Counted from the first letter of the stretch, positions 253 to 57,030 are shown. The stretch: DNA of 64,000 nt from Squalus acanthias (GCA_030390025.1 CM059443.1:48732001-48796000); one strand, 5' to 3'. Notes: generated by a model from the sequence alone, not told the origin. Made by a program: numbers and translations.

Positions 253-307
253 CTGTAGCATGTTGGAACAGAAGGAAAAGACCCACAAACAAAGCACCGA
301 GCGCCAT
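253..307 (-). CDS. Signal-peptide (leader) exon of the next receptor copy, whose body lies left of the window
   Basis: ATG at 307 reads MALGALFVGLFLLFQHAT-G, then phase-1 donor GTAAGG. Acceptor ttttctctcacag puts the exon start at 363. Identical to the leader at 40715-40769. Confidence 0.85.
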
Positions 308-429
308 TTCACATTCCTAGCTGGTTCGGAAGCTGGGTGGCTGTTTCACCATCACACTCTGATCTGTGAGAGAAAATGAGAAGTGCAACCTTTAGAGGTG
401 GTGAAAGAGAAAATCATCTTCCTGTTTGA

Positions 430-925
430 TCAGCTCAACTACAACAACAACGACAACTTGCATTTATATAGCCCCTTTAATGTAGTAAAACATCCCAAGG
501 TGCTTCACAGGAGTGTTACAAAACAAAATTTGACACCGGACCACATTAGGGCAGATGACCAAAAGCTTGGTCAAAGAGTTTTGAGGAGCGTCTTGAAGCA
601 GAAAAGAGAGTTAGAGAGGTGAAGAGGTTTAGGCAGGGAATTCCAGAGCTTAGGGCCTCGGCAGCTGAAGGCACGGCCACCGATGGTTGAGCGATTGAAA
701 TCGGGGATGCTCAAGAGGGCAGAATTAGAGGAGCGCAGTTATCTCGGAGGGTTGTGGGGCTGTGGGTGATTACAGAGATAGGGAGGGGTGATGCTATGGA
801 CGGACTTGATAACAAGAATGAGAATTTTAAAATCCAGGCGTTAATTAACCGGGAGCCAATGTAGGTCAGGTTGATTTGTGAACGGGACTTGGTGCGAGTT
901 AGGACATGGGCAGCAGAGTTATGAT
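430..925 (-). mobile_element. Degenerate L2-like LINE 3' fragment (duplicated at ~40900-41390)
   Basis: Tail motif caacttgcatttatatagc...gcttcacag shared with the local SINE tails; boundaries approximate. Confidence 0.45.
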
Positions 926-1664
926 GACTCAGATGATATGTGTGCACTGACATTGTATTAATGGGCCTGAGGACAGCGATTGGGCTGTTCGTTCAACCCT
1001 CCAACCACAGAAAGGACTGGAGAGGTGAGACGCTCTGAAATACAAAGTGTATACTATGAGCGTGCCACTGTGTACCACAGTGATAGTGAGTAACACACTC
1101 GGCAGCCGTGTCATTTTCTACTGCCCACATAGAACAACACCCAGTGCAGGAAAGATTGTGAAACGCTTACTGAGACATAGAAGGAAGTTTTACATTAACC
1201 CACCCACCGGGAAAGTGACAGGATCGGGTGCAACACTGGTTTTACATCTCGCCCAATTGTACCCTCCATTGAGGTCTGTGTAGAGTAATATTGGGCAGGG
1301 TGTAAATGTGGCATTATACTGTGGGGCTCCCCCCGCACCCCCCTGCCCCGTTAACTTAAAATGACCCTCAGCTGCTCACCATACATGAAGCATTTGTTCC
1401 GTAAGATAAGTGAATCTGGGTGTAAGCTCTAGTTCCTGAAACTATGGAAACAGAATTTAATTGGACAGGATCAAAGTGGGTTCACTGGTCACTTTGGGGG
1501 TCAGCGAGCAATAGCAGACAGAAAGTTTCCCTGTACTGTAGTCCTGGCCGCAGGAGATTAGATACATTTGCTAAGATAGAGCAACTTGTACACAGTCTGA
1601 GAAGGGGGATGAAGAAAGAAAAGAAGAAAGAAAGCTAGAAAGAAAGATAGAAAGACAGGCAGAC

Positions 1665-1995
1665 AGCCTTGCATTTATAACACGGCATTCATGACCTCAG
1701 GGCGTCTCAAAACGCTTTACAGCCAATTATTTACTTTTTGAAGTGCAGTCACTGTTGTAATGTGGGAAACACGGCAGCCAATATGCACACAGCAAGCTCC
1801 CACAAACAGCAATGTGATAATGACCAGACCAACTGTTTTTAGTGATGCTGATTGAAATAACTGCTGGCCAGGACACCGGGGAGAACTCCCTTGCTCTTCT
1901 TTGAAATAGCGCAGTGGGATCTTTCGCACCCACCTGAGCGGGCAGACGGGGCCTCGGTTTCACGTCTCATCCGAAAGATGGCACCTCAAACAGTG
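1665..1995 (-). mobile_element. Deu-domain SINE fragment (SacSINE1-like); duplicated at ~42135-42460
   Basis: Reverse complement of the full copy at 35521-35993 (gcagacggggcctcggtttcacgtctcatccgaaag). Confidence 0.7.
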
Positions 1996-2579
1996 AAGGA
2001 GGCCATTCAGCCCATCGTGCCTGTGGGTAGAAAGAGCTATCCAATTAGACCTAGTCCCCTGCTCTTTCCCCGTAGCCCTGCAAATTTGAAATAAGGTTCC
2101 CACCTATTTCTAGTGGGAGTGCTGGAGGCCATTTTGCTGCCCATCGAGAATTGAGTTGGGCAGACTTCAGGAATCCATTGGGTGGGAGATGGTTTTTCAT
2201 CTTCATCTGATTTGCAGTGGGAACAGAGTGGTATGTGGATGGAAATCACCTCCTGGTGTCTAAAGTGAAGGTTATGTTCCGGAACAACGGTCATAAGGAG
2301 AGCGAGGCCGGCCTGCGAGTGACGCGACAGCGGGGCCACAGATCCACCTACTCCTGCTCCTATTTCTTATGTTCTTATGTCAGTAATCGGTTAGTGATGG
2401 CCGAATGCACTTCCTGTCTGAGCGCAAAGGTAACGGAATGTGCTTCCTGTCCTGGATCAAAGGTCAGCAAAGGGTCGGGTCGGGAATAAAATAGCAACTC
2501 ATGATTTGTATAACAAATCTCATGATTTTTAAGAGTTTGTCTCCTGATTTATGAGACGGTGGGGTTGGCATTGCTGCTC

Positions 2580-2940
2580 ACACCCACTTCTACACCAACA
2601 AGCTGTAAATAGCTGAGCCTTTTAGACTTGCTTTACTGCCACTCATCAGTTAGAATTTCTAATCATCACACACTTCCTGCCACTTTCGTACTGAGTTCAT
2701 TTGGAATCACTTCACACCAGTCCTTGTGTGTGGTGTTCATATTGTAAATAACACCCATTGTTCCAGAGTTAGGTGCTGAAGCCTAGGGCTGGACAATGAG
2801 CCAAATGCCAGGGTTATGAGGGTAAATTCACTGACTCTATCCCCTCCCCGCACCCCGCCAGCAGTGAGCTCTGCTTGAAGGAGACACAATCTATCAGAGG
2901 GCCACAGTGCTAACCCCTGACCCCTGTTTGAGCATGGCTG
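2580..2940 (-). promoter_or_regulatory. Putative promoter/enhancer block upstream of the leader exon
   Basis: Non-repeat block retained in three copies (also ~19050-19430 and ~43035-43400), with ETS-like CACTTCCTG and RUNX-like TGTGGT motifs. Function is inferred only. Confidence 0.3.
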
Positions 2941-5598: not shown

Positions 5599-5849
5599 TC
5601 AGGTTTCCTCCATTTTAGCATAAATAGGATTTTCTTCCATTTTTAACGGGCCAGGTCGTGGATCATCTTCCTCCAGCTGGGACTGTGTCACCGCGTCTAC
5701 CGGGCAGCCTATCAAAGAATAAATCTGCTCATTGGACAAAGCAATGGGATCCTCCTTACTGTCCTCTTTGGGCTGTGATTGGCCGCCTGGTTTGAGTTCA
5801 GTAGCTGAAGAGGTTTCAACCTGCCGTCCATGGTCCGTGTGGTCTCTGC
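5599..5849 (-). CDS. Receptor A last coding exon (cytoplasmic; QIYSLI and NPIYAKM motifs)
   Basis: Acceptor aatatctag, phase 1; reads RDHTDHGRQVETSS...NEQIYSLIGCPV...MEENPIYAKMEET*. Confidence 0.75.
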
Positions 5850-6009: not shown

Positions 6010-6044
6010 ATTTTACTCCCTGGTTCTCAGTTTTGCCTCCATCA
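6010..6044 (-). CDS. Receptor A 35-nt cytoplasmic exon
   Basis: ttttcctag / GTAAGT, phase 2 to 1, DGGKTENQGVK; exactly bridges the phases of its neighbouring exons. Confidence 0.75.
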
Positions 6045-9780: not shown

Positions 9781-9967
9781 CCTTTGACCATTGACTCTTC
9801 GATCAAACAGTACACATGCTCTGTAGAGTCAGACTTTGGGCCAGTGCTCTCCATTCCTTCACCAGGCCTTGGCTGGCTCGATGGCGTTGGAACTCTCGTC
9901 ACCGAGTACGCAACATGGTCGTTGTCATCGCTCTGATCCCTTCTGGGAACCACAGAGTACGGGAAAC
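9781..9967 (-). CDS. Receptor A cytoplasmic exon with three Tyr motifs
   Basis: tctgtctag / GTAAGC, 187 nt, phase 1 to 2; FPYSVV...VAYSVT...HVYCLI. Confidence 0.8.
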
Positions 9968-10061: not shown

Positions 10062-10096
10062 ATTCAGCCACCTGTGTCAGCTGCACATCACCAGCC
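10062..10096 (-). CDS. Receptor A 35-nt cytoplasmic exon
   Basis: actgtag / GTAAGT, phase 2 to 1, AGDVQLTQVAE. Confidence 0.7.
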
Positions 10097-10193: not shown

Positions 10194-10215
10194 CTGGGTC
10201 CTGGTGCTGAGGATC
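10194..10215 (-). CDS. Receptor A 22-nt cytoplasmic microexon
   Basis: gtgaag / GTAGGG, phase 1 to 2, GSSAPGPR; needed to keep frame and conserved in copies B and C. Confidence 0.6.
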
Positions 10216-10325: not shown

Positions 10326-10433
10326 CTTTGGCAGCTTGTCGTTTCCTTCGGATTATGCAAAGTACCCCAACAATGCAAATGATCACAACCGCACACGCTA
10401 TGGTTACTTTCACAGATGTGGCAGTGTCTGGAC
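10326..10433 (-). CDS. Receptor A transmembrane exon (uncharged core)
   Basis: ctctgcag / GTAAGC, 108 nt, phase 1-1; GPDTATSVK-VTIACAVVIICIVGVLCII-RRKRQAAK (hydrophobic run plus basic stop-transfer). Confidence 0.85.
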
Positions 10434-13434: not shown

Positions 13435-13625
13435 TTTGAGTATTTGTACGAGTTAAGTTGCTGGTCACTGAGGAGATTCCAGATGTTGAGGTGGGGGTGT
13501 CTGAAGTCTCTGCACTCGCCTCTGTCACAGTAAGGGAGATGTTTGCTGCAATCTTCCAGACAGGTTTCCCTGAATCCTGACTGTGGACAGCACAGAGATA
13601 CCTCCCAGTGTCCACCACATCCGCT
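13435..13625 (-). pseudogene. 3' remnant of receptor A V-set (D2) exon; leader, D1 and the 5' part of D2 are missing
   Basis: ADVVDTGRYLCAVHSQDSGKPVWKIAANISLTVTEASAETSD...TQ with intact donor, fused to LINE sequence at ~13625. Confidence 0.85.
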
Positions 13626-22837: not shown

Positions 22838-23502
22838 ACCTGCCGTCCATGGTCCGTGCGGTCTCTGCCTAGATATCAAGAGAGGAGATCACGTTTGATG
22901 GGTTCACTTCCAGTGGGGGACAGATAATGAAAGCGGACTGTCTCGTTACATCAGATAAAGCTCCAGGAGCTTTAGAACAGACACAGTGTTGGCTGAGAGG
23001 ATTGTACTGAAAGATTGCAATTACTTACATTTTACTCACTGAATTTCACTTTTGCCTCCATCACTAAGAATACAGAAAATTAAACATGTGAAGCATCAGT
23101 AACATAAGATTCAAACAATAATAAACATCTGTAAATGGATTTGCTATTTTTAACCCCTGGATTTGAATCCGTCTCTCTACTCTTCAATTTTCGCTCTCAC
23201 CATCTCCCATCACTCTCCCTTTCCCTCACTCGCCCTCTATCTTTCCCTCCCTCCTTTCTCTCTCTCTATATGTCTGTCTCTCTCACTCTACCCCTCTCTC
23301 TATCCCTCCTCCTCTCTCTGGACTGTAAGGGTCATTTAAGAAATGATTTACATTCAACTTCCTGTGTCAGCCACACATTAGCCCCCTGCAGTTATTAAAG
23401 AAATGCAACTGGTAAATGTTTCATTGAATGAGAAAAACTAAACAGAAAGTCTGAATGAAAACTGAGTGAATCACATCCCTGCCACTACCGATGCTGAGGA
23501 TC
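22838..23502 (-). CDS. Receptor B cytoplasmic exons, tyrosine-free (microexon from 23502; 23352-23385; 23029-23063; remnant from 22868)
   Basis: Homologous to the A exons. Read-through gives GSSASVVAGM* (stop 23471-23473); spliced gives GSSAS(VV)-GANVWLTQEVE-LMEAKVKFSE*. The splice path actually used is uncertain. Confidence 0.5.
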
Positions 23503-30579: not shown

Positions 30580-30696
30580 CCTTGGCAGCTTGCCGTTTCC
30601 TTCGGATTATGCAAAGTGCCCCATCAATGCAAACTAGCACAACCAAGTACAGAACCAAAACACACATACGTATGTCACTGCAGCTGGTGTAAGGAC
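30580..30696 (-). CDS. Receptor B transmembrane exon (charged: Arg and Asp)
   Basis: ctctgcag / GTAAGC, 117 nt, phase 1-1; GPYTSCSDI-R-MCVLVLYLVVLVCI-D-GALCII-RRKRQAAK. Confidence 0.85.
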
Positions 30697-30803: not shown

Positions 30804-30940
30804 CTGGAATAGTCCAATGGCGAAGGAAGTAAATCAAAGCAACTTATAACGGCTACAAACTGTACAACTGATCTGGAATCTCTCAGTTTGAATTATTGAT
30901 ATTAAAAGATTCACATCATATTCTAGATTGTATCACTTAC

Positions 30941-31402
30941 TTTGAGTATTTGTACAAGTTATGCTGCTGGTCACTGAGGAGATTCCAGATGTTGAGGTGG
31001 GGGTGTCTGAAGTCTCTGCACTCGCCTCTGTCACAGTAAGGGAGATGTTTGCTGCAATCTTCCAGACAGGTTTCCCTGAATCCTGACCGTGGACAGCACA
31101 GAGATACCTCCCAGTGTCCACCACATCCGCTGAGTGAATAGTAAGGTTGTGAGACTGGGGTCTAGCAGTAGGATTGTCTGAGCTTTGGGCAGAGATTCTT
31201 TGTGACGACCTTCTATCCACACAGCAGCGTGTGTTAATTTTTGCCTCCTTTTCCTCAATGTGAACAGAGTGCAGACACTTGGAAACGTTTCCAGATCTGA
31301 TCCAAAACAGAGTGAAGGGGAGCTTTTTTGTATTCTCAAACTGGCAGGGTAAAGTCACATTCACTCCCTCTGAGGAGATTTCTTCAGTAGAAAATATTTC
31401 AT
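30941..31402 (-). CDS. Receptor B D2 exon: V-set Ig domain plus Ser/Thr stalk
   Basis: 462 nt, phase 1-1; VTLPC, LFWIR, LTIHS, DTGRYLC V-frame motifs; extra cysteines KC and RCC. Confidence 0.92.
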
Positions 31403-31860: not shown

Positions 31861-31869
31861 TACACGTAC

Positions 31870-32268
31870 CACTCTGGATTATCACAAAGAACAAGTCGTG
31901 GTTTTCACATCCCTCTCCTGACAGTGTGAGCCAGGACGGACACTTCGATGATCCTCCGTCTGTGGAATCCTGAGCCGAGCAGGTAAATACCATCGAGTTA
32001 AACGTCTCCACATCGAATGTCAGAGACTGAGACTCCATTTGTTCTTCGTTTAATTTGCATTTACTAGACTTTAGTTTGCTGGGCCTTTTTCTCAACTTAG
32101 GACTGATGTTTTCACCAAATTTCCTTTCCTTCTTACATTTTATTTTGTCCATTTCTGCTCCGAGATCAGTGGAGCTGCACAAGGTTACTTCATCCCCAGC
32201 ACCAGTGGGCATGTTGCACTGCAGAGTGGTGACATCTCCTGGTCCTCGGGAGAAGAGATAAGTGGATC
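31870..32268 (-). CDS. Receptor B D1 exon: divergent Cys-rich Ig-like domain
   Basis: ttccctgcag / GTACGT, 399 nt, phase 1-1, open; PGDVTTLQC...SLTFDV...VFTCSA...LFFVII. Lacks the canonical C-strand Trp. Confidence 0.85.
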
Positions 32269-32439
32269 CTGCAGGGAAAGGGCAGAATCGGATAGAGATA
32301 AATAACATCCAACACAGGAAAGATCATTAAACACTCAATGTGACACAAGCCTCTCACAGTGAACGAAGGAATCATACTCTTGGTAATAGGCCAGTTTATT
32401 GTTCCTTTCATAGACTTCTTTGCTACAGTCTATAAATTA

Positions 32440-40714: not shown

Positions 40715-40769
40715 CTGTAGCATGTTGGAACAGAAGGAAAAGACCCACAAACAAAGCACCGAGCGCCAT
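40715..40769 (-). CDS. Receptor B signal-peptide exon
   Basis: MALGALFVGLFLLFQHAT-G with a phase-1 GTAAGG donor compatible with D1 at 32268. Confidence 0.85.
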
Positions 40770-46021: not shown

Positions 46022-46323
46022 CTATGGGTTTAAACAAGTTATCCGTTGCCTTTCTCCTGTTACTCGATTATGCTCAGGTTCTTCCATTTTAGCATAAATA
46101 GGATTTTCTTCCATTTTTAACGGGCCAGGTCGTGGATCATCTTCCTCCAGCTGGGACTGTGTCACCGCGTCTACCGGGCAGCCTATCAAAGAATAAATCT
46201 GCTCATTGGACAAAGCAACGGGATCCTCCTTACTGTCCTCTTTGGGCTGTGATTGGCCGTCTGGTTTGAGTTCAGTAGCTGAAGAGGTTTCAACCTGCCG
46301 TCCATGGTCCGTGTGGTCTCTGC
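46022..46323 (-). CDS. Receptor C last coding exon (QIYSLI, NPIYAKM; C-terminus extended relative to A)
   Basis: Homolog of 5599-5849; a 1-nt indel gives ...MEEPEHNRVTGERQRITCLNP*. Confidence 0.75.
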
Positions 46324-46483
46324 CTAGATATTAAGAGAGGAGATCACGTTTGATGGGTTCACTTCCAGTGGGGGACAGATATTGAAAGTGGACTGTCTCG
46401 TTACTTGAGATAAAGGTCCAGGAGCTTTAGAACAGACACAGTGTTGACTGGGAGGATTATACTGAAAGATTGCAACGACTTAC

Positions 46484-46518
46484 ATTTTACTCCCTGGATT
46501 TCAGTTTTGCCTCCATCA
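46484..46518 (-). CDS. Receptor C 35-nt cytoplasmic exon
   Basis: Homolog of 6010-6044, splice sites intact. Confidence 0.75.
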
Positions 46519-49500
46519 CTAGGAAAACAGAAATTAAAACATGTGAATAATGAGTAACATAAGATTCAAACAATATTAAATCGTTGTAAGTGGAGACTAG
46601 GTGAGGTCATTTTCTCCCCAGAGCCTGGATTTGAGTCCAGCCCAGACTGAAATTCTCTCATTCATTTTCTCTCTCTCTGTCTATCTCCCTCTGACTCTCT
46701 GATTGTCTCTCCGACTCTCTTTCTCTCTGTCTCTCTCTCTCGCTGTCTCTCTCTGCCTGTCTCCCTGTCTCTCTGTCTGTCTATCTTGCTGTCTCTCTCC
46801 ATTCTCTCTGTCTCTATGTCTGCCTCTCTCCNNNNNNNNNNNNNNNNNNNNNNNNNNNNNNNNNNNNNNNNNNNNNNNNNNNNNNNNNNNNNNNNNNNNN
46901 NNNNNNNNNNNNNNNNNNNNNNNNNNNNNNNNNNNNNNNNNNNNNNNNNNNNNNNNNNNNNNNNNNNNNNNNNNTGTCTGTCTCTCACTGTCTCCCTCGC
47001 TGTCTCTCTCCATTCACTCTGTCTCAGTCTCTTTGTGTCTGTCATTCCCTCCCTGTCTCTATGTCTGTCTCACTATGTCNNNNNNNNNNNNNNNNNNNNN
47101 NNNNNNNNNNNNNNNNNNNNNNNNNNNNNNNNNNNNNNNNNNNNNNNNNNNNNNNNNNNNNNNNNNNNNNNNNNNNNNNNNNNNNNNNNNNNNNNNNNNN
47201 NNNNNNNNNNNNNNNNNNNNCTCTCTTTCTCTGTGTTGCTCTGTCTCTCTCTCTGTCTCTCTCTCCCTATCTCTATCGCTCTTTGTCTCTCTCTCTCTCT
47301 CACTTTGTCTCTCTCACTGTCTTTGCTGTGTGAGCAGTCCTCTCTGCAATGAGTTTTCACAGTCCCAATCCAGTTCCTTGCCTAAAACTGCGCATCATTC
47401 AGTAAAATATTTGGACTAAATTGATCATTATGGTCAGATAAGCCAAAATATTTTCCTGAGAAATTTATAAAAAAACTTCACACGGGCACAGTGAAAGGAG
47501 CTATTCTGATGTTGGGATAAAGGAGCACTAGCAGGTCAGAGGGCAGAGTGATTTACACGGCCTCCAGCCATTCTATACCTGACTTCGAACTGTTCGGTTG
47601 TGAGATTGGCTGCAAAACCTGGAAATGTTTTATGCTGGGTGGTGGAATAGATTAGTACGGCCCTTTAATATTTTAGGATCTGCCAAGTCCAAATTACTAG
47701 GAATAAAAGTCCTCTTTCTATATCTCTCTGGTCTCTATCTCTGTCTGTCTCTGTCGCACTCTCTGTCTGTCTCTGTCTCTTTCTCTCTAAGGGTCCTTGA
47801 TGAAATGAGGATTGAGAGCAGTTTAGGATTCAGCAAAGGAGGACAAAGGGATTAATTAAGAGGGGGGAAATAGAGTATGAGAGTAAGCTTGCAGGGAACA
47901 TAAAAACTGACTGTAAAAGCTTCTATAGATATGTGAAGAGAAAAAGATTGGTGAAGTCAAGTGTAGGTCCCTTGCAGTCAGAATCAGGGGAATTTATAAT
48001 GGGGAACAAAGAAATGGCAGACCAATTAAATACATACTTTGGTTCTGTCTTCACAAAGGAGGACACAAATAACCTCCCAGAGATGTCAGGGAACATAGGG
48101 TCTAATGAGAGGGAGGAACTGAAAGAAATCAGTATTTGTACGGAACTGGTGTTAGGGAAATTGATGGGATTGAAGGCCGATAAATCCCCAGGGCCTGATA
48201 ATCTACATCCTAGGGTACTTAAGGAAGTGGTCCTAGAAATAGTAGATGAATTACTGGTCATCTTCCAAAATTCTATAGACTCTGGAACAGTTCCCATGGA
48301 TTGAAGGGTAGCTAACGTTACCCCACTATTCAAAAAAGGTGGTAGAGAGAAAACGGGGAATTATAGACCGGTAAGCCTGACATCGGTAGTGGGGAAAATG
48401 CTAGAGTCCATTATAAAAGATGTAATAGCAGAGCACTTGGAAAACAGTGACAGGATCGGTCAAAGTCAACATGGATTTACAAAAGGTAAATCATGCTTGA
48501 CTAATCTACTGGAATTTTTTGAGGATGTAACTGGTAAAATAGATAAGGGAGAACCAGTGGATGTGGTGTATTTGGACTTTCAGAAGGCTTTCAATAAGGT
48601 CCCGCATAAGAGATTAGCGTGTAAAGTTAAGGCACATGGGATTGGGGGCAGGGTACTGACTTGGATAGAGAACTGGTTGGCAGACAGGAAGCAAAGAGTT
48701 GGAATGAACGGGTCTTTTTCCGAGTGGCAGGCAGTGACTAGTGGGGTACCACAGGGATCGGTCCTAGGACCCCAGCTATTCACAATATATATATTAATGA
48801 TCTAGACGAGGGAACTAGATGTAATATCTCCAAGTTTGCAGACGACACAAAGCTGGGTGGGCGTGTGTGCTGTGAGGAGGATGCCGAGAAACTCCAGTAT
48901 GATTTGGATAGGTTGGGTGATTTGGCAGATGCATGGCAAATGCAGTACAATGTGGATAAATGCGAGGTTATCCACTTTGGTGGCAAAAACAGGAAGGCAG
49001 ATTATTATCTGAACGGCAATAGATTGGGAGAAGGGGAAGTGCAACGAGACCTGGGTGTCCTTGTGCACCAGTCGCTGAAGGTAAGCATGCAGGTGCAGCA
49101 GGCGATTAAGAAGGTAAATGGTATGTTGTCCTTCGCAGCGAGAGGGTTCGAGTACAGGAACAAGGATGTCTTGCTGCAGTTGTACAGAGCCTTGGTGAGA
49201 CCACATCTTGAGTATTGTGTGCAGTTTTGATCGTCTTATCTGAGGAAGGATGTTCTTGCCATGGAGGGAGTGCAGCGAAGATTCACCAGACTGATACCTG
49301 GGATGGCAGGAATGACGTATGAGGAGAGATTGGGTCGATTGGGCTTGTACTCGCTGGAGTTTAGAAGAATGAGAGGGGATCTCATTGAAACTTATTAAAT
49401 TCTAACAGGACTAGACAGACTAGGTGCAGGAAGGATGTTCCCGATGGCCGGGGAGTCCAGAACCAGGGGTCATAGTCTAAGGATAAGGGGTAAGCCATTT

Positions 49501-50127
49501 AGGACAGAGATGAGGAGGAATTTCTTCATGCAGAGAGTGGTGAACCTGTGGAATTCTCTACCACAGAAGGCAGTTGAGGCCAACTCATTAAATATATTCA
49601 CGAAGGAGTTAGATATATTTCTTAAGGCTAAAGGGATTAAGGGATATGGGGAGAAGGCAGGGACAGGGTACTGAATTTGGATGATCAGCCATGATCTCAA
49701 TGAATGGCGGAGCAGGCTCGAGGGGCCGAATGGCCTACTCCTGCTCCTATCTTCTATGATTCTATGATTCTATGAATTTGGTCATCTCGTTCCAGTTTGT
49801 AGCTCGTGTGAGCCACAGTACAAAACTACCCCTAAATTGTCACTTTCACTCAAACAGGCCATGAGGTGTGAGAAGTGAAATGTCCGAGCTCCCTCCTGAG
49901 TTTGGAGTTGAGGAGCATTGTTGGGACAGTCCAGAGGGAGCTTTATGCTGCACCTAATCTGGAGTGCTCCAAATGATACTGTGTGGCCACAGTGGAAAAG
50001 TAACCCACTTGCAGAGTGGGCTCCCCTCACCTTCATTACATTAACAATCTCCGAACCCTCCATCCCAAAACAAACCCATGGCCAGTGTTGAACGTTGCCA
50101 GGGGCCGACAGCTGTCACTCTGCTTAC

Positions 50128-50562
50128 CCTTTGACCATTGACTCTTCGATCAAACAGTACACATGCTCTGTAGAGTCAGACTTTGGGCCAGTGCTCTCCA
50201 TTCCTTCACCAGGCCTTGGCTGGCTCGATGGCGTTGGAACTCTCGTCACCGAGTACGCAACATGCTCGTTGTCATCACTCTGATCCCTTCTGGGAACCAC
50301 AGAGTACGGGAAACCTAGACAGAAGGACGGGTAGACGAGGTGTGCTTTTAGTTTCAACTCTCAAAGGGACAGGCTCGGAAGAGCTGGGCAGTAATTCTAG
50401 TCACTTACATTCAGCCACCTGTGTCAGCTGCACATCACCAGCCCTACAGTTAGTAAAGAAAAGCAACCTGTAAATGTTCCATTAAATGAGGAAAACTATA
50501 CAGAAAGTCTGCCCGAAAACTGAACGAATCCCATCCCTACCTGGATCCTGGTGCTGAGGATC
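50128..50562 (-). CDS. Receptor C cytoplasmic exons (50541-50562, 50409-50443, 50128-50314)
   Basis: Same lengths (22, 35, 187 nt), phases and splice sites as in A; FPYSVV, VAYSVT and HVYCLI retained. Confidence 0.78.
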
Positions 50563-50672
50563 CTTCACAACACATGCCATAAGATTGGAAAGATAAATTT
50601 AAAAGTCTTTGTAAGGAGTCTGCACTTACAATTTTCTAGATTTAGATCAAACATTTTAAAGCTCTTGCTTAC

Positions 50673-50798
50673 CTTTGGCAGATAGTCGTTTCCTTCGGAT
50701 TATGCAAAGTGCCCCAACAATGCAAAGTGCCCCAACAATGCAAATGATCACAACCGCACACGCTATGGATACTTTCACAGGTGTGGCAGTGTAAGGAC
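50673..50798 (-). CDS. Receptor C transmembrane exon (uncharged core, 18-nt internal duplication)
   Basis: GPYTATPVK-VSIACAVVIICIVGALCIVGALCII-RRKRLSAK, 126 nt, phase 1-1. Confidence 0.85.
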
Positions 50799-50872
50799 CT
50801 GCAGAGGAGAAGCAACATTAAGTTCAGTCTGTGCAATCCCGTGTTATATGTACAGCTGATCACACTGGTTAC

Positions 50873-50904
50873 CTGGCTGAGGAACAGACATTTCCGAGTA
50901 GAAT
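50873..50904 (-). pseudogene. Frameshifted (32-nt) copy of the linker exon
   Basis: CTCAGCCAG versus CTCAGCCCAG in the three 33-nt copies. Confidence 0.7.
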
Positions 50905-53114
50905 CTGGAAAAGTGCAATGGCGAAGAAAGGAAATCGAACCAACTTTTAATGGGTACAAACTGGACAACTGATCTGGAATCTATCAACTTTAATTTTTTT
51001 TATTCATTCATGGGATGTGGGCGTCATTGACAAGGCCAACATTTATTGCCCATGCCTAATTGCCATTGAGAAGGTGGTGGTGAGCCGCCTTCTTGAACCG
51101 CTGCAGTACGTGTGGTGAAGGTACACCCACAGTGCTGTTCGGGAAGGAGTCCCAGGATTTTGATCCAGCGACGATGAAGGTTCGGCGATGTATTTCCAAG
51201 CCAGGATGGTGTGTGACTTGGAGGGTAACTTGGAGATGATGGTGTTCCCATGCGCCTAATGCGCTGTCCTTCTAGGTGGTAGAGGTCGCGGGTTTGGGAG
51301 GTGCTGCCGAAGAAGCCTTGGCGAGTTGCTGCAGTGCATCTTGTAGCTGGTACACACTGCAGCCACGGTACGCCAGTGGTGGTAGGAGTGAATGTTTAAG
51401 ATGTGGATGGGGTGCCAATCAAGCGGGCTGCTTTGTCCTGGATGGTGTCGAGCGTCTTCAGTGTTGTTGGAGCTGCACTCATCGAGGCAAGTGGAGAGTA
51501 TTCCATCACACTCCTTACTTGTGCCTTGTAGATGGTGGAAAGGCTTTGGTGAGTAAGGAGGTGAGACACTCGCTGCAGAATACCCAGCCTCTGACCTACT
51601 CTTGTTGCCACAGTATTTATATGGCTGTTCCAGTTACGTTTCTGGTCAATAGTGACCCCCAGGATGTTGATGGTGGGGGATTCGGCAATGGTAATGCCGT
51701 TTATTGTTAAGGGAAGGTGGTTAGATTCTTTCTTGTTGGAGATGGTCATTGCCTGGCACTTATGTGGCGCGAATGTTTCCTGCCACTTATCAGCCCAAGC
51801 CTGAATGTTGTCCAGGTCTTGCTGCATGCGGGCACGGACTGCTTCATTATCTGAGGGGTTGCGAATGGAACTGACCACTGTGCAGTCATCAGCAAACATC
51901 CCCACTTCTGACCTTATGTTGGAGGGAAGGTCATTGATGAAGCAGCTGAAGATGTTTGGGCCTAGGACACTGCCCTGTGGAACTCCTGCAGTGATGTCCT
52001 GGGGCTGAGATGATTGGCCTCCAACAACCAGAACCACCTTCCTTTCTGATAGGTATGACTCCAACCAGTGGAGAGTTTACCCCCTGATTCCATTGACTTC
52101 AATTTTACTCAGGTTCCTTGATGCCACACTCGGTCAAATGCTGCCTTAATGTCAAGGGCAGTCACTCTCACCTCCCCTCTGGAATTCAGCTTTTGTCCAT
52201 GTTTGGACCAAGGTTGTAATGAGGTCTGGAGCCGAGTGGTCCTTGCGGAACCCAAACTGGGCATCAGTGAGCAGTGCTGCTTAATAGTACTATCGACAAC
52301 ACATTCCATCATTTTGCTGATGATTGAGAGTAGACTGATGGGGCAGGAATTGACCGTTTTGGATTTGTACTGCTTTTTGAAGACAGGACATACCTGGGCA
52401 ATTTTCCACTTTGTCGGGTAGATGCCAGTGTTGTAGCTGTACTGGAACAGCTTGGCTAGAGGTGCGGCTAGTTCTGGAGGACAAGTCTTTAACACGACAG
52501 CCGGGATGTTGTCGGGGCCCATAGCCTTTGCTGTATCCAGTGCGCTCAGACATTTCTTGATATCACATGGAGTGAATCAAATTGGCTGAAGACTGGCTTC
52601 TGTGATGATGGGGACTGCAGGAGGAGGCCGAGATGAATCATCCACTCACCACTTCTGGCTGAAGATGGTTGCAAACACTTCAGCCTTGTCTTTTGCACTC
52701 ACGTGCTGGGCTCTGACATCATTGAGGATGGGGATGTGCATGGAGTCTCCTCCCGTTAGTTGTTTAATGGTCCACCACCATTCACGATGTGGCAGGACTG
52801 CAGAGCTTTGATCTGATCCATTGGTTGTGGGATCACTTTACTCTGTCTATAGCATGCTGCTTCTGCTGTTTAGCATGCATGTATTGTAGCTTCACCAGGT
52901 TGGCACCTCATTTTTTGGTACGTCTGGTGCTGTTCCTGGCATGCTCTTCTACACTGCTCATTGAACCAGGGTTGGTCCCCTGGCTTGATGTTATTGGTAG
53001 GGTGAGGGATATGTCGGCCCATGAAGTTACAGATTGTGGTGGAGTACAATTCTGCTGCTGCTGATGGTCCACAGTACCTCATGGATGTCCAGTTTTGAGC
53101 TGCTAGATCTGTTC

Positions 53115-53432
53115 ACAGAATCACAGAATCACAGAATCCCCACAGTGCAGATAGAGGCCATTTCGGCCCATCGAGCCTGCACCGACACATATCCCACCCT
53201 ATCCCCGTAACCCCACGTATTTAATCCCCCTAACACTAAGGGTCAATTTTTATCATAGCCAAATCAACCTAACCCGCACATCTTTGGACTGTGGGAGGAA
53301 ACCGGAGCACCCGGAGGAAACCCACGCAGACACGGGGAGAATGTGCAAACTCCACACAGACAGTCACCCGTGGCCGGATTCGAACCCGGGTCCCTGGCCC
53401 TGTGAGGCAACAGTGCTAACCACTATGCCACC
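53115..53432 (-). mobile_element. HE1-like V-SINE, absent from the paralogous site at ~12765
   Basis: tRNA head tggcatagtggttagc...gggttcgaatcc, V-domain gtctgcgtgggtttcctccggg, (ttctgtga)n tail. Confidence 0.85.
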
Positions 53433-54091
53433 ATTTAGCACGGTGGTAGTGCCACACAACACGATGGAGGGTGTCCTCAGGATGAAGACGGGTCCTTGTC
53501 TCCACAAGGACTGTGCGGTGGTCACTCTTACCAATACTGTCATGGAGAGATGCATCTGCGACAGGTAGATTGGTGAGGACGAGGTCAAGTATGTTTCTCC
53601 CTCGTGTTGGTTCTTTCACCACCCGCCGCTGGCAGCTATGTCCTTCAGGACTCGACCAGCTCGGTCAGTAGCGGTGCTACCGAGCCACTCGGTGATGGAT
53701 ATTGAAGTCGCCCACCCAGAGTACATTCTGTGCCCTTGCTACCCTCAGTGCTTCTTCCAAGTGGTGTTCAACGTGGAGGAGTACTGATTCATCAGCTGAG
53801 GGAGGGTGGAAGGTGGTAATCAGCAGGAGGTTTCCTTGCCCATGTTTGGTCTGATGCCATGAGACCTCTTGGGGTCAGGGAGTCAATGTTGAGGACTCCA
53901 AGGGCCACTCCCTTCCGAATGTATACCACTGTGCTGCCACCTCTGGTGGGTCTGTCTTGCCTGAGGGACAGGACATACTTAGGGATGGTGATGGAGGAGC
54001 CTGGGACATTTCGTGAAAGAATTATTTATATTATTTATATTGAATTATTTATATTAAATGAGTTGCATTGTTTCTAGATTGTATCACTTAC

Positions 54092-54163
54092 TTTGAGTAT
54101 TTGTACGAGTTAAGCTGCTGGTCACTGAGGAGATTCCAGATGTTGAAGTGGGGGTGTCTGAAG
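54092..54163 (-). pseudogene. Short 3' remnant of the C-copy D2/stalk exon
   Basis: SDTPTSTSGISSVTSSLTRTNTQ plus donor; truncated next to the LTR. Confidence 0.8.
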
Positions 54164-54184
54164 ATTTACCACTGCTCATTACAG

Positions 54185-55510
54185 TGTAGGCTTCGCAAAA
54201 TCCCCCAGAAACTCGAACAGAAACCTAAAAGGAGTGATTTTTGGATCTTTCATATAAACTTGGGATGATGGGACCCAAGTGAAGTGATTTGAGGTAAAAA
54301 CCTCAGTTTTGGACATTTTAAAGATCAGGGAAGAAAAGCCCTGAGGAAAATGACTTTTGAATCTTACTGTTGGGAAAGACACCTTTCACAGACACAAGAC
54401 AGGCTGCGGAGGGGCGTGGCCAGGCAGTGGAAAGCTTTGGGTATTGGGGCCTAATCAAGCTGTCTGGGAATTGTTTACACTGCAATCCTACCAAGGAGGA
54501 AGAGACAAACCCAAAGCCTCACAGACACATCGAAATATGAATAATCCAAGACCTCCCTTTGAAATTCCCAGGCCCAAACAGGATAGCAGAAGCCTGAAAT
54601 CAATAAAACATTTAGTACCCCGATTACTTCATCAAAAACCAATCAACCAGGTATCCACAGGGACAGATTTACAAGCCCGCCAAAAACCTAGGACAATAGG
54701 GACAAGATTTGGCGCGCAGATAAAGGCCCCGCCTAAATGGGAAATATCGGAAGCCATCCGGACATGTTGAACACCAAGTTAAAGCCATCGAAACTGACAA
54801 GCCCGCCAAAACTAAGACAATGGAATAAACAGGGCTCAATTGAAATCTAAAGGAAACCGATTTAGTAAGGAGTTTTGGGCGCGAAAAGGACAAAGGGCCT
54901 GAACAGTATAATTGGGGGCCTAATCACCCAAGACTGGCTCTCTGAACTCTCTGACAACGCTCTCAACGCTCGCACAGCTCTCTCTCAGCTCTGTTCCAGC
55001 AAGACACCACAAGCCACGAGCAGGAGGAGGAAAGAAGGCCAACAACTTCACAAGCAGACCAACATGTAATAAGAAACCAGAGCGACTGCCTCAGTGACCA
55101 TCGGACACCTCGCAGCAACTAGGGCCTTATGAAACCTTTTACTCAAAAGACTCTAAACCCTAACTCTCAACTGTCAAGGATTCGTTTGGTGAACATTATC
55201 CCTGATCTCCTGAAACCAAAACCTAGCTAGATAGTGGGATTTTTGGGAGGGATAAGGTTTTTTTGTATATTGTCCTTCTCCCTCGCCTGTACCGTGTGTT
55301 CCCCAACCTGTGTTTAAGTGTTAAGTGTGTTTTAAGTTTGTTACCTTTTCTTTTAATAAAGTCAAAATTCTTTCATCAGAACCTGTTGTCTACTGCATCT
55401 TTGTTCACAACCCCTAAATAAGTCCAAAGTCTAGAACCAGGGGCGTGGGAGCGATTCGAACCGCTCACTGAGTCAGAGGTGAAGGCTGACCCCACACACC
55501 ACCCCCTACA
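54185..55510 (+). mobile_element. Solo LTR (~1.33 kb)
   Basis: TGTAGG...CCTACA inverted termini, AATAAA at 55355-55360, no recognisable coding domain; flanks acag/acac are not a clean TSD. Confidence 0.75.
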
Positions 55511-55521
55511 ACACTGGTTAC

Positions 55522-55554
55522 CTGGGCTGAGGAACATACTTTTCTGGTTAGAAT
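55522..55554 (-). CDS. Receptor D 33-nt linker exon
   Basis: NSNQKSMFLSP, splice sites intact. Confidence 0.7.
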
Positions 55555-55691
55555 CTGGAATAGTGCAATGGCGAAGGAAGTAAATCAAAGCAACTTATAA
55601 TGGCTACAAACTGTACAACTGATCTGGAATCTCTCAGTTTGAATTATTGATATTAAAAGATTCACATCATATTCTAGATTGTATCACTTAC

Positions 55692-56174
55692 TTTGAGTAT
55701 TTGTACGAGTTAAGCTGCTGGTCACTGAGGAGATTCCAGATGTTGAGGTGGGGGTGTCTGAAATCTCTGCACTCGCCTCTGTCACAGTAAGGGAGATGTT
55801 TGCTGCAATCTTCCAGGCAGGTTTCCCTGAATCCTGACCGTGGACAGCACAGAGATACCTCCCAGTGTCCACCACATCTGCTGAGTGAATAGTAAGGTTG
55901 TGAGACTGGCGTCTAGCAGTAGGATTGTCTGAGCTTTGGGCAGAGATTCTTTGTGACGACTTTCTGTCCACACAGCAGCGTGTGTTAGAATGTGCCTTAT
56001 AATCCTCAATGTGAACAGAGTGCAGACACTTGTTGACGTTTCCAGATCTGATCCAAAACAGAGTGAAGACGAGGTTTTTTGTATTCTCAAACTGGCAGGG
56101 TAAAGTCACATTTTCTCCCTTTGACACTGTCAGCGACCAGGAGTTTTCTTCAGTAGAAAATATTTCATCCGAAT
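55692..56174 (-). CDS. Receptor D D2 exon: V-set Ig domain plus stalk
   Basis: 483 nt, open, phase 1-1; GENVTLPC, LFWIR, DTGRYLC. Confidence 0.9.
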
Positions 56175-56625
56175 CTATAAACAACATTAAAAAGAACATT
56201 TGTTACTAATTATTTAGAAGTGCCGTTCCCACATGTTATCCAGCTGTTTGATGTAAGTGTGAGTCTGTCTGTAACTAGCTGTATTATCAGCAGTGGAGAC
56301 AGCAGGCGTGGGCCAGGGCCAAATCCTTGTTTGGAATATTTGTCTGATTTTCCCACCGTTAGATTAAACATTCCCCAGCTAGAGGCAGATTGTGTAAGAT
56401 CAGGAAACACTCAGGGACTGAGAGCAAGGAGCGAGAAGACAGGACAAATAATGAAAGATCGAACACACAAAGGCAAAAGACAGGGGCAGACACTAAAGGA
56501 CAGAGACAAGGGGGGTAGACTTCAAACTCGCTTCTCTGTATCTCGATACCTGGGAATTTTATCCCGCCCCCCCGCCCCCAGATACTTCCCCGATCCCTCC
56601 CCCGATATTGCCCCAGTACACGTAC

Positions 56626-57030
56626 CACTCTGGATTATCACAAAGAACAAGTCGTGGTTTTCACATCCCTCTCCTGACAATGTGAGCCAGGACGGACACT
56701 TCGATGATCCTCTTTCTGTGGAATCCTGAGCCGAGCAGGTAAATACCGTCAAGTTAATCGTCTTCACATCGAATGTCAGAGACTGAGACTCCGTTTGTTC
56801 TTCATTTAATTTGCATTTTCTACACTCTGGCTTACTCTGCCTGTTTGTCCAATTAGGACTGATATTTTCACAAAATTGCATTTCCTTCTCTTTATTCTCA
56901 CATGTATTGTCAATTTCTGCTCCGAGATCAGTGAAGCTGCACAAGGTGACTTCATCCCCAGCACCAGTGGTCACGTTGCACTGCAGAGTGGTGACATCTC
57001 CTGGTCCTCGGGAGAAGAGATAAGTGGATC
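56626..57030 (-). CDS. Receptor D D1 exon: Cys-rich Ig-like domain (leader expected right of the window)
   Basis: 405 nt, open, phase 1-1, same splice sites as 31870-32268. Confidence 0.85.

What the first reader, a model, noticed from the sequence alone, without database searches (positions are those of the whole stretch)
253..57030. Tandem cluster of an unrecognised two-Ig-domain receptor family with paired-receptor architecture
Seen: a ten-coding-exon minus-strand gene model (leader, D1, V-set D2 plus stalk, linker, TM, five tail exons) whose GT/AG sites and phases close exactly, repeated as copies A, B and C/D plus the leader of a further copy. A and C have an uncharged TM core and five tail tyrosines; B has a charged TM and no tail tyrosine. 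Established: this split defines paired receptor families such as LILR/KIR, CD300, SIRP, teleost NITR and skate MDIR. Inference: this is a shark paired immune receptor family. I do not recognise the ectodomain as any of those families, and most exons are invisible to the ORF track.
Basis: partly seen in the sequence, partly recalled or inferred. Interest (0 to 1): 0.92.

Follow-up and report, generated by a model that had tools for sequence, protein, structure and literature searches.

The report
Shark paired Ig receptor gene cluster
This is part of a cluster of shark genes for cell-surface receptors that come in matched long-tailed and short-tailed (probably "off" and "on") versions, from an unnamed family found from sharks to platypus but not seen in other mammals.

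Summary
On the minus strand I re-derived every exon with AG/GT sites and closing phases. No copy has all ten exons in the window: C/D has nine (no leader), B has five plus two decayed remnants, and A has seven and lacks its 5' end. The N gaps lie in a (TC)n intron of copy C and touch no exon.

A and C have uncharged TMs and five tail tyrosines. B has an R...D TM and a tyrosine-free tail.

B is not a recent wreck. The same R/D TM and short tail recur in 5 other shark species and form one tree group with 99/98 support. Ectodomains are 92-95% alike within species but 46-68% between species.

RNA-like contigs splice D1>D2>charged TM.

All looked-up homologues, from sharks to monotremes, are "uncharacterized" or carry only generic names, bar one stray label and one unnamed cluster.

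Caveats:
- The window's tails have no canonical ITIM.
- Tissue and adaptor are unknown.
- Kinship to fish DICP or skate MDIR could not be tested.

The scan had noted the same cluster on adjacent DNA (s1-890137).

The parts
253..307 (-). Leader exon (ATG to donor, 55 nt, phase 0>1) of a further copy whose D1 lies left of the window
   Evidence: tblastn to P0002/P0004 leader
5599..5849 (-). Copy A tail exon 5 to the stop codon; holds YSLI and NPIY
6010..6044 (-). Copy A tail exon 4 (35 nt, phase 2>1); also open in the phase-1 frame down to a stop
9781..9967 (-). Copy A tail exon 3 (187 nt); holds three tyrosines (PYSVV, VAYSVT, VYCLI)
10062..10096 (-). Copy A tail exon 2 (35 nt, phase 2>1)
10194..10215 (-). 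Copy A tail exon 1 (22 nt, phase 1>2)
10326..10433 (-). Copy A TM exon (108 nt, phase 1>1), uncharged core followed by RRKRQ
13435..13623 (-). Copy A 3' half of a D2 exon fused to linker-type downstream sequence. Likeness to D2 ends at about 13637 against a LINE. No D1 or leader for A lies upstream.
23032..23063 (-). Copy B terminal coding exon (homologue of tail exon 4). Entered in phase 1, its full codons read MEAKVKFSE and then stop.
   Evidence: same tail in P0118, P0122, P0003
23348..23507 (-). Copy B decayed remnants of tail exons 1 and 2 (2-nt and 1-nt deletions; donor of remnant 1 changed GT>GC)
30580..30696 (-). Copy B TM exon (117 nt, phase 1>1) with Arg near the outer end and Asp in the inner half
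   Evidence: laid with 0 differences in contigs of 4 of 4 runs; tree
30941..31402 (-). Copy B D2 (V-set) plus stalk exon (462 nt). The acceptor lies 6 nt downstream of the one in copy D.
   Evidence: joints
31870..32268 (-). Copy B D1 exon (399 nt, phase 1>1)
   Evidence: joints
40715..40769 (-). Leader exon of copy B (8446-nt first intron holding LINE pieces and a 27-bp satellite)
46022..46323 (-). Copy C tail exon 5. A 1-nt deletion near the end extends the frame by 17 codons to a stop ending at 46022.
46484..46518 (-). Copy C tail exon 4
46832..47220 (.). Two assembly gaps (46832-46974, 47080-47220) inside the intron between C tail exons 4 and 3, flanked by TC/CT arrays
50128..50314 (-). 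Copy C tail exon 3
50409..50443 (-). Copy C tail exon 2
50541..50562 (-). Copy C tail exon 1
50673..50798 (-). Copy C TM exon (126 nt; an 18-nt internal duplication lengthens the uncharged core)
54092..54190 (-). Copy C/D linker (second stalk repeat) exon, 99 nt, phase 1>1; weak acceptor
   Evidence: matching linker in P0108, P0008
55692..56174 (-). Copy D D2 (V-set) plus stalk exon, 483 nt
56626..57030 (-). Copy D D1 exon, 405 nt; its leader is not in the window

Best explanation
The window holds about one and a half repeat units of a tandem cluster that continues to the left. The cluster encodes type I membrane receptors of an unnamed Ig-superfamily lineage.

Each receptor has:
- a signal peptide;
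- a fast-evolving, cysteine- and lysine-rich Ig-like D1;
- a V-set D2 with three extra cysteines;
- a Ser/Thr-rich stalk, with an optional second stalk exon;
- one TM helix.

Two signalling versions exist. Long forms (C/D, and the 5'-truncated A) have an uncharged TM and a tail of roughly 170-190 residues with five tyrosines: three YxxI/V motifs, one VAYSVT and one NPIY. Short forms (B) have an Arg...Asp TM. Their TM exon is spliced in phase 1 straight onto the homologue of tail exon 4, which then reads a different frame and stops after ten codons.

Most likely mechanism (inferred):
1. Both versions see the same or similar ligands through D1/D2.
2. Long forms, once tyrosine-phosphorylated, recruit SH2 phosphatases or SHIP at the YxxI/V sites, and a PTB adaptor such as Dok at NPIY, and so dampen the cell.
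3. Short forms pair through their TM charges with an ITAM adaptor (FcR-gamma- or DAP12-like) and activate it.

Shown here: gene structure, splicing of D1>D2>charged TM, the age of the two TM lineages, and within-species homogenisation of ectodomains.
Inferred: topology, signalling partners, leukocyte expression and ligand.
For: - Exon table: AG/GT at every exon and closing phases.
- Homology-guided mapping with Heptranchias XP_067829442.1 (P0002) and others places every exon.
- D2 passes Pfam V-set: 37.4 bits against a cut-off of 26.
- Short form with a conserved R (6 of 6) and D (5 of 6; N in Mustelus) in the window plus 5 other sharks. In 3 of those 5 (Pristiophorus, S. torazame, Mustelus) the tail is also the same kind of alternative-frame tail.
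- The 6 short-type TM regions sit on one side of a branch with 99/98 support. 0 of 500 label shuffles did as well.
- Short-versus-long ectodomain identity within a species is 0.95, 0.93 and 0.92 in 3 of 3 species that have both forms. Between species it is 0.46-0.68.
- In the window, B versus D ectodomain dS is 0.04-0.08, whereas B versus A TM exon dS is 0.47.
- NPIY is present in 12 of 12 shark long tails and in A and C.
- Contigs of 4 runs from 2 studies skip the introns with CT..AC ends. D2>TM is joined at 30696/30941 with 115 and 56 letters on the shorter side. The B TM exon is laid with 0 differences in 4 of 4 runs. Intron bins 31673-31806 and 32276-32400 have depth 0.
Against: - There is no canonical ITIM, ITSM or ITAM in A or C. 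The first tyrosine has F at -2. Only 5 of 12 shark homologue tails have a canonical ITIM there.
- The runs are only guessed to be RNA, and their tissue and species are coded.
- The B-specific D1>D2 joint (31402/31870) has only 28 letters on its shorter side. That is under the tool's own 31-letter rule.
- The long contig that joins D2 to the charged TM differs from B in D1/D2 (28 and 18 letters, plus a 15-nt insertion), so it comes from another copy or haplotype.
- The TM>exon 4' joint in B is inferred from homologues, not seen.
- An acidic residue in a receptor TM is the less common way to pair with adaptors.
- A has no 5' exons, and C/D has no leader in the window.
- D1's fold is not shown: Pfam finds nothing, hhalign against D2 gives 0.8% probability, and only a weak profile match to TCR V-beta exists (E 0.0027).
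Confidence: 0.72

Rival explanations
1. It is the cartilaginous-fish (and tetrapod) branch of an already described fish family, most plausibly the DICPs, or else the skate MDIRs. On this reading it is a paired family, but not an unrecognised one.
For: DICPs are described as D1-D2 (sometimes D1-D2-D1-D2) receptors. They have two family-specific cysteines besides C23/C104 in each domain. They come in inhibitory, activating (Arg in the TM), secreted and ambiguous forms (preprint 10.1101/2021.06.11.448072, passages and section 13). The family here has the same layout, and one Heptranchias model is D1-D2-D1-D2 (P0001). There are several near-identical copies on one contig in a characiform, and members in gar, lungfish and teleosts.
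Against: None of the 30 clusters I looked up carries a DICP, MDIR, CD300 or NITR name. The Atlas neighbours of a teleost member's D2 list no DICP cluster. DICPs are reported only from bony fish and coelacanth, whereas this family reaches birds and monotremes. D2 lacks the CD300/MDIR-type WCR and FTV motifs described in PMC3031540. No CD300, TREM or NKp44 chain is among the 60 best PDB matches. No DICP or MDIR sequence could be fetched, so this remains open.
Confidence: 0.2
2. The short form is not an activating receptor. It is a tail-less decoy or ligand-sink version, or a partner chain of another complex, and the TM charges serve something other than ITAM-adaptor pairing.
For: The window gives no evidence for any adaptor. 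Asp in the inner half of a receptor TM is unusual for the class. Tail-less isoforms with an uncharged TM also exist (P0123). Long-form genes keep the alternative frame of exon 4 open down to a stop (the copy A rows run with the wrong phase).
Against: R is kept in 6 of 6 short forms and D in 5 of 6, across shark orders, on a well-supported branch. That argues for selection on the charges themselves. Charged TM plus short tail is the standard signature of adaptor-coupled receptors (established knowledge; also stated for DICP and NITR).
Confidence: 0.12
3. The family is not an immune receptor family. It would be a conserved adhesion or other signalling molecule that happens to be amplified in sharks.
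For: In turtles, crocodilians, birds and monotremes it looks low-copy, with a conserved tail motif (ECsPYAV) from shark to bird. Tissue of expression is unknown. There is no canonical ITIM here.
Against: Tandem amplification, paired TM and tail types, a fast-evolving membrane-distal domain (D1 63-66% against 92% for tail exon 3 versus Pristiophorus), and ectodomain dN/dS of 1.1-1.7 against 0.3-0.4 in tails are all typical of immune receptors. The dN/dS counts are tiny and only suggestive.
Confidence: 0.12
4. Copies A and C are not two loci. They would be one locus assembled twice (haplotypes laid in tandem), so the apparent copy number and the headless copy A are assembly artefacts.
For: 13.5 kb are 96-97.7% identical at a spacing of 40,462 bp, and copy C contains two assembly gaps.
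Against: The two differ by indels in coding exons: an 18-nt duplication in C's TM exon and a 1-nt deletion in C's last exon. Their upstream contexts differ completely: a LINE at 13637 against the linker, D2 and D1 at 54190-57030. Each is followed by its own leader exon.
Confidence: 0.08

Closest known systems
CD200R1 / CD200R-like paired receptors (mammals)
   Same: Two Ig domains. The inhibitory member signals without a canonical ITIM through an NPxY tyrosine that recruits a PTB adaptor (Dok2). The activating relatives have a charged TM and a short tail. These points are recalled knowledge. NPIY is present in A, C and 12 of 12 shark long tails. A 'CD200 receptor 1-like' cluster is among the Atlas feature neighbours at 0.91-0.92, which is a lead only.
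   Different: CD200R is V then C2. Here the clear V-set domain is membrane-proximal and D1 is an odd V-like domain. No CD200R chain is among the listed PDB matches. The tail here has four further tyrosines.
DICP (diverse immunoglobulin domain-containing proteins) of bony fish
   Same: D1-D2 ectodomain of two distinct Ig types. Occasional D1-D2-D1-D2 forms. Extra conserved cysteines. Inhibitory, activating (Arg in the TM) and secreted or ambiguous forms. Clustered multigene families.
   Different: DICPs are reported only from ray-finned fish and coelacanth and are linked to the MHC. This family runs from sharks to monotremes. No record looked up bears the name. Sequence kinship is untested.
MDIR of the clearnose skate and the CD300/pIgR/TREM type of V domain
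   Same: MDIR is the only paired IgSF family that my paper searches turned up for cartilaginous fish. It has activating and inhibitory members (PMC3031540, passages).
   Different: MDIR domains are described as CD300/TREM/pIgR-like. D2 here lacks the WCR and FTV motifs. Its best PDB matches are TCR V-alpha (E 7.6e-5) and PD-1; pIgR scores only E 0.0036, and no CD300, TREM or NKp44 chain is in the best 60.
Carp SITR
   Same: The same rare order of domains: an N-proximal non-classical Ig domain and a C-proximal V domain (PMC3031540, section 5).
   Different: SITR is soluble and 241 aa long. Its V domain is clearly CD300-like (BLAST E<=1e-9). It has no TM or tail.
KIR, LILR/PIR, SIRP, Siglec-11/16 and CEACAM paired systems
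   Same: Tandem clusters. Ectodomains are kept alike between activating and inhibitory genes, while the signalling modules are separate old lineages (here).
   Different: The domain types differ (C2/I-set or V-C1-C1). Those families have canonical ITIMs, and the activating TM usually carries Lys or Arg only.

Membership tests
Paired activating/inhibitory IgSF receptors (functional class) | Tandemly clustered genes with closely related ectodomains | tested here: met
   B versus D: D1 80% and D2 89% amino-acid identity, dS 0.04-0.08. Repeat unit of 40,462 bp.
Paired activating/inhibitory IgSF receptors (functional class) | Members with a charged residue in the TM and a short tail without tyrosines | tested here: met
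   B TM exon has R and D, and exon 4' has 0 Tyr. The same form occurs in 5 other shark species.
Paired activating/inhibitory IgSF receptors (functional class) | Members with a long tail carrying a canonical ITIM (S/I/V/L)xYxx(I/V/L) | tested here: not met
   0 canonical ITIM, ITSM or ITAM in A and C; only YSVV, YCLI, YSLI and NPIY. A canonical ITIM is present at the first Tyr in 5 of 12 shark homologue tails.
Paired activating/inhibitory IgSF receptors (functional class) | Ectodomains co-evolve within a species while signalling modules are old, separate lineages | tested here: met
   Within-species identity 0.92-0.95 in 3 of 3 species, against 0.46-0.68 between species. Short-type TM forms one group, 99/98 support.
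Paired activating/inhibitory IgSF receptors (functional class) | Short form associates with an ITAM adaptor; long form recruits phosphatases | not testable with these tools
   Needs biochemistry.
Paired activating/inhibitory IgSF receptors (functional class) | Expression on leukocytes | not tested
   Transcript-like contigs exist, but sample and organism are coded and the library type is a guess.
Ig V-set domain (Pfam PF07686) | Passes the curated Pfam score | tested here: met
   D2 of copy D scores 37.4 bits and D2 of copy B 26.0 bits, against a cut-off of 26. D2 is also matched in 6 of 6 full-length homologues (5 above the cut-off; Xenopus P0172 only 16.3 bits). D1 gets no Pfam family at a meaningful E-value in any of them.
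Ig-like fold for D1 | Cys(B)-Trp(C)-Cys(F) pattern and similarity to solved Ig domains | tested here: inconclusive
   C17 and C98 are invariant, and the consensus has Trp in the strand-C position outside sharks. D1 profile against PDB: best hit TCR V-beta at E 0.0027, and 59 of the 60 listed hits are Ig-superfamily chains. The single sequence finds nothing (E 0.4). hhalign against D2 gives 0.8% probability. Atlas neighbours are V-set clusters at 0.92, a lead only.
CD300 / pIgR / TREM / skate MDIR type | V domain with WCR (strand C) and FTV (strand E) motifs and strong similarity to CD300/pIgR (as given in PMC3031540) | tested here: not met
   D2 reads ...TLFWIRSG... and ...HNLTIHS.... pIgR scores E 0.0036. 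No CD300, TREM or NKp44 chain is among the 60 best of 252 PDB matches.
CD300 / pIgR / TREM / skate MDIR type | Direct homology to skate MDIR2-4 | not testable with these tools
   The sequences are named in PMC3031540, but no tool here could fetch them.
DICP | D1-D2 ectodomain; inhibitory, activating (Arg in the TM) and secreted forms | tested here: met
   This is an architectural resemblance only.
DICP | Sequence homology of D1 and D2 to zebrafish and gar DICP domains; MHC linkage | not testable with these tools
   Haire et al. 2012 (PMC3351558) is not held.
NITR | Membrane-distal V domain with a J-like motif (recalled definition) | tested here: not met
   The V-set domain is membrane-proximal, and its last strand reads ...GKPAWKIAANISLTVTE with no FGxG-type motif.
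CD200R | V-C2 ectodomain; NPxY in the inhibitory tail | tested here: inconclusive
   NPIY is present. The domain order differs. There is no CD200R chain in the PDB lists. The Atlas neighbour at 0.91-0.92 is only a lead.

The most novel reading that the evidence does not exclude
This is a receptor lineage as old as jawed vertebrates. It is kept from sharks to monotremes, absent from therian mammals, and unnamed for that reason. In sharks it has been amplified into a KIR/LILR-like paired system and is a candidate for the missing NK- or myeloid-type receptors of cartilaginous fish.

Within repeat unit 1, the activating gene B and the headless inhibitory module A that lies downstream on the same strand may form one transcription unit. 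One ectodomain could then be switched between the R/D TM and the tyrosine-rich tail by choice of 3' exons. A 35-nt exon read in two frames would supply the short tail.
Probability: 0.12. Interest if true: 0.8.

Novelty: new member of a known kind. Interest (0 to 1): 0.58.

Why it matters
Which germline receptors regulate innate lymphoid and myeloid cells in cartilaginous fish is largely unknown. A 2019 review of fish immunity that I searched has no hit for 'NK cell' or 'ITIM'. MDIR in skate was the only paired IgSF family that my searches turned up for the group.

This cluster offers a concrete, testable candidate:
- intact genes;
- spliced transcripts;
- an activating-type and an inhibitory-type module that predate the split of the shark orders sampled;
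- ectodomains kept alike within each species, which is the mark of systems driven by pathogens or by self ligands.

The family also has single- or low-copy relatives in bony fish, amphibians, reptiles, birds and monotremes, with a conserved tail motif. Its biology could therefore be studied in Xenopus or chicken-like models, and its loss in therians dated.

Tried and rejected
Tried without result:
- Pfam on D1 and on the A partial exon found nothing.
- Pfam on six full-length homologues found only Ig families over D2.
- A single-sequence PDB search with D1 gave E 0.4.
- hhalign of D1 against D2 gave 0.8% probability.
- Seven paper searches found no description of this family.
- PMC4701786 matched only through the author name 'Sharkey'.
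- A search of earlier findings by words returned nothing.

Considered and rejected:
- CD300/MDIR-type V domain: the motifs and PDB ranks do not fit.
- NITR: wrong domain order and no J-like motif.
- SIRP, KIR and LILR: different domain types.
- B as a fresh pseudogene: the trans-species short form argues against it.
- The N gaps breaking an exon: they are intronic.

The dN/dS values rest on 4-26 changes per exon and are only suggestive.

- Structure prediction, so no fold search was possible.
- The look-up of encoding contigs, so there is no synteny or copy spacing from other sharks.
- The Atlas reader for new sequences.

Supplements are closed. The supplementary alignments and tables of the DICP preprint might have allowed a DICP comparison. 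I did not see them.

I gave no spliced (joined) model to any tool. Exons were searched and translated one by one, and whole-protein statements rest on database homologues.

Full report
WHAT IS THERE

The window is repeat-rich vertebrate DNA. It carries many LINE reverse-transcriptase ORFs. It also carries a large direct duplication:
- 1-6350 matches 40463-46813 at 97.4%.
- 6884-12764 matches 47222-53114 at 96.0%.
- 12775-13506 matches 53431-54163 at 97.7%.

A second pair of blocks, 30760-31439 / 55511-56205 and 31825-32360 / 56581-57122, is 92-93% alike.

The long minus-strand ORFs in those blocks are the two ectodomain exons. The D2 ORFs pass or reach Pfam V-set: 37.4 and 26.0 bits against a cut-off of 26. 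The D1 ORFs match nothing.

GENE MODEL

I searched the D2 exon of copy D alone against 1.84 billion representative proteins. That gave 99 hits at E<=1e-3, four of them at E<=1e-30. The best hits are predicted shark proteins.

tblastn of these proteins on the window placed every exon. I then read the boundaries from the DNA and checked them by script, one exon at a time.

All exons have AG before and GT after, and the phases close:
- leader 0>1
- D1 1>1
- D2 1>1
- linker 1>1
- TM 1>1
- tail exons 1>2, 2>1, 1>2, 2>1, 1>stop

What each copy holds:
- Copy C/D has nine exons, from D1 at 57030 to a stop ending at 46022. A 1-nt deletion extends its last exon. Its leader is not in the window. The 34-nt leader pattern occurs only at 274-307 and 40736-40769.
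- Copy B has its leader at 40769-40715, D1 at 32268-31870, D2 at 31402-30941, TM at 30696-30580 and a terminal coding exon at 23063-23032.
- Copy A has seven exons (13623-5599) and no D1 or leader. Its first exon is the 3' half of a D2 exon that runs into linker-type flanking sequence. It is cut off at about 13637 by a LINE.
- The leader at 307-253 belongs to a further copy on the left.

N GAPS

Both gaps (46832-46974 and 47080-47220) lie in the 3.6-kb intron between C tail exons 4 and 3. They are bordered by TC/CT arrays. The flanks are collinear with the ungapped intron of copy A. No exon or frame depends on them. Their length stays unknown, and I did not try to fill them.

THE TWO SIGNALLING TYPES

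A and C have uncharged TM cores followed by RRKR. Each has five tail tyrosines: three in tail exon 3 and two in tail exon 5.

B's TM exon has an Arg near its outer end and an Asp in its inner half.

In B:
- Tail exon 3 is gone.
- Tail exon 5 is truncated.
- Tail exons 1 and 2 survive as remnants with 2-nt and 1-nt deletions.
- Remnant 1 has lost its GT donor.

The TM exon ends in phase 1. The homologue of tail exon 4 entered in phase 1 reads MEAKVKFSE and then stops. In the long form the same exon is entered in phase 2 and reads DGGKTEIQGVK.

This is not a private accident of B. Three other sharks have predicted proteins with an R-x3-LVLY...IC(I/L/S)(D/N)G TM followed by the same kind of alternative-frame tail:
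- Pristiophorus (P0118)
- Scyliorhinus torazame (P0122)
- Mustelus (P0003)

Heterodontus (P0117) and Heptranchias (P0001) have the same TM with other short tails.

A tree of 18 TM regions puts the 6 short-type rows on one side of a branch with 99/98 support. 0 of 500 label shuffles did as well.

By contrast, ectodomains group by species. Short-versus-long identity is 0.95 (Pristiophorus), 0.93 (Mustelus) and 0.92 (S. torazame), against 0.46-0.68 between species.

In the window the same contrast appears. B versus D ectodomain dS is 0.04-0.08, while the B and A TM exons differ at dS 0.47.

Old signalling modules combined with homogenised ectodomains are the signature of paired receptor systems.

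TAIL MOTIFS

A and C contain no canonical ITIM, ITSM or ITAM. They have YSVV (with F at -2), YCLI, YSLI and NPIY, plus VAYSVT.

Among 12 shark long tails:
- 5 have a canonical ITIM at the first tyrosine.
- 12 have NPIY.
- 12 have YC(L/V)(I/L).

Calling the long form 'inhibitory' is therefore an inference. It rests on ITIM-like and NPxY motifs, as in CD200R (recalled). It is not a motif match.

EXPRESSION

One search for runs and one lay were allowed. Eleven runs hold part of 30570-32280. All are labelled 'RNA?' by guess, and their organisms and samples are coded.

I laid contigs of X1-X4 (two studies) on 30400-32400 at 90% likeness. They show:
- A joint 30696/30941 (written 30694>30939, cut +2), skipping 244 nt, with CT..AC ends. 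It appears in X2 (a 1053-nt contig, 115 letters on the shorter side) and X4 (56 letters). This is D2 spliced to the charged TM exon.
- The TM exon 30580-30696 laid with 0 differences in all 4 runs, ending exactly at the exon borders.
- A joint 31408>31870 in all 4 runs (up to 255 letters a side). It comes from contigs that differ from B (18-28 letters and a 15-nt insertion that copy D also has). This is the D1>D2 splice of D-like paralogues.
- The B-specific joint 31402>31870 (CT..AC) in X1 and X3, with only 28 letters on the shorter side. That is under the tool's 31-letter rule.
- Zero depth in intron bins 31673-31806 and 32276-32400.

Intron-skipping contigs mean spliced RNA, so the family is transcribed and spliced as modelled. 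B's own full transcript and its TM>exon 4' joint were not seen.

WHAT FAMILY

P0002 found 23 proteins, all from sharks of 11 species. 21 are named 'uncharacterized'. The other two carry names prompted by the Ser/Thr-rich stalk. Rhincodon adds a twelfth species.

More distant members keep leader, D1, D2 and TM, and a tail with a conserved ECsPYAV motif. They come from:
- sturgeon, gar, lungfish and teleosts
- newt, axolotl and frogs
- lizards and a snake
- turtles and crocodilians
- duck and kiwi
- echidna and platypus

Of the 30 clusters whose names I looked up:
- 28 are only 'uncharacterized', 'hypothetical' or 'Ig-like domain-containing'.
- One has a single stray 'PD-L1' label beside 'uncharacterized' members.
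- One has no name.

The echidna protein found only itself and a platypus protein (2 hits among 2435 candidates). No therian mammal appeared in any list. That search needs shared 5-residue words, so this is absence of evidence only.

Among the 99 hits, 59 match a family D2 profile at E<=1e-20 and 29 match a D1 profile. The profiles were built from family members, so this is partly circular.

DOMAINS

D2 is a generic V-set domain:
- Its best solved relatives are TCR V-alpha (E 7.6e-5), PD-1 and pIgR (about 2-4e-3).
- No CD300, TREM or NKp44 chain is in the best 60 of 252.
- Atlas neighbours of a teleost member's D2 are assorted V-set clusters.

D1 alone matches nothing. A 19-sequence D1 profile matches TCR V-beta at E 0.0027. 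The two invariant cysteines align to the Ig B- and F-strand cysteines, and 59 of the 60 listed hits are Ig-superfamily chains. Atlas neighbours of the turtle D1 are V-set clusters at 0.92, which is a lead only.

D1 is the fastest-evolving part. Identity to Pristiophorus is 63-66% for D1, against 80-83% for D2 and 92% for tail exon 3. The B/D differences crowd into its middle, including the loss of two cysteines in B.

COMPARISON WITH KNOWN FAMILIES

The CD300/MDIR type is not supported, on motifs and ranks. The domain order is that of carp SITR, but SITR is soluble and clearly CD300-like.

The closest architectural match in print is the DICP family of bony fish. It has D1-D2, sometimes doubled, extra cysteines, an Arg in the activating TM, and inhibitory and secreted forms.

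I could not fetch any DICP or MDIR sequence. PMC3351558 is not held and supplements are closed. That kinship stays open, and I put it at about 0.2.

Functionally the long tail most resembles CD200R, which has NPxY and no strict ITIM (recalled).

VERDICT

The paired-architecture reading is well supported by comparative and transcript evidence. 'Immune' and the signalling roles are inferred. 'Unrecognised' holds for every database name and for the seven paper searches I ran, with DICP as the untested alternative.

It is a new family of a well-known kind of system. It is of solid interest to comparative immunology but is not a new principle.

Earlier notes of this scan describe the same cluster on the adjacent window (s1-890137). 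I did not check them.

Noticed in passing
window 6010-6044, 46484-46518, 23032-23063: One 35-nt exon is used in two reading frames. Entered in phase 2 it gives DGGKTE(I/N)QGVK in long forms. Entered in phase 1 it gives MEAK...E plus a stop, which is the whole short tail. The stop-bearing frame is kept open even in the long-form copy A (MEAKLRTRE*), and the matching short tails occur in three other shark species.
   Followed up: partly
window 31402-31410 versus 56174-56176: Copy B has lost the D2 acceptor used in copy D (AG>AC) and gained an AG 6 nt downstream. The frame is kept and two residues are dropped. Short contigs of runs X1 and X3 show the B-type joint, with 28 letters on the shorter side.
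   Followed up: partly
window 46022-46090: Copy C has a 1-nt deletion just before the stop that copy A uses. It adds 17 codons to the C-terminus.
   Followed up: yes
window 50673-50798: An 18-nt tandem duplication (CIVGAL twice) lengthens the TM core of copy C relative to copy A.
   Followed up: no
window 38179-39606: A 27-bp satellite with 51 copies at 88% matches, inside the first intron of copy B.
   Followed up: partly
window 58989-61925 (minus strand): An uninterrupted 978-codon LINE ORF (endonuclease plus reverse transcriptase), upstream of copy D's D1. It may be a young, possibly active element sitting in that gene's first intron.
   Followed up: no
window 30400-30466: A 60-nt stretch with very high summed contig depth (7.5e4 to 2.6e5) and many loose ends in all four runs. 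It is most likely part of an abundant transcribed repeat, not of the receptor gene.
   Followed up: no
window 31405-31538: Contig depth inside the D1-D2 intron of B coincides with a LINE RT fragment. It is probably TE transcripts rather than intron retention.
   Followed up: no
window 31990-32160 versus 56750-56920: The differences between B and D in D1 are concentrated in the middle of the domain. They include the loss of two cysteines in B, possibly one disulfide.
   Followed up: partly
proteins P0111, P0115, P0124 (Pristiophorus), P0001 (Heptranchias): The predicted isoforms include forms that skip D2, D2 plus linker, or the TM exon, which all-phase-1 exons allow. One D1-D2-D1-D2 model may be a read-through of two neighbouring genes.
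   Followed up: no
proteins P0150, P0152, P0156, P0157 (turtles, a duck): Mis-fused gene models join family members to LRRC40-, FAM81A- and CHRNA7-named pieces. These are possible hints to the tetrapod genomic neighbourhood.
   Followed up: no
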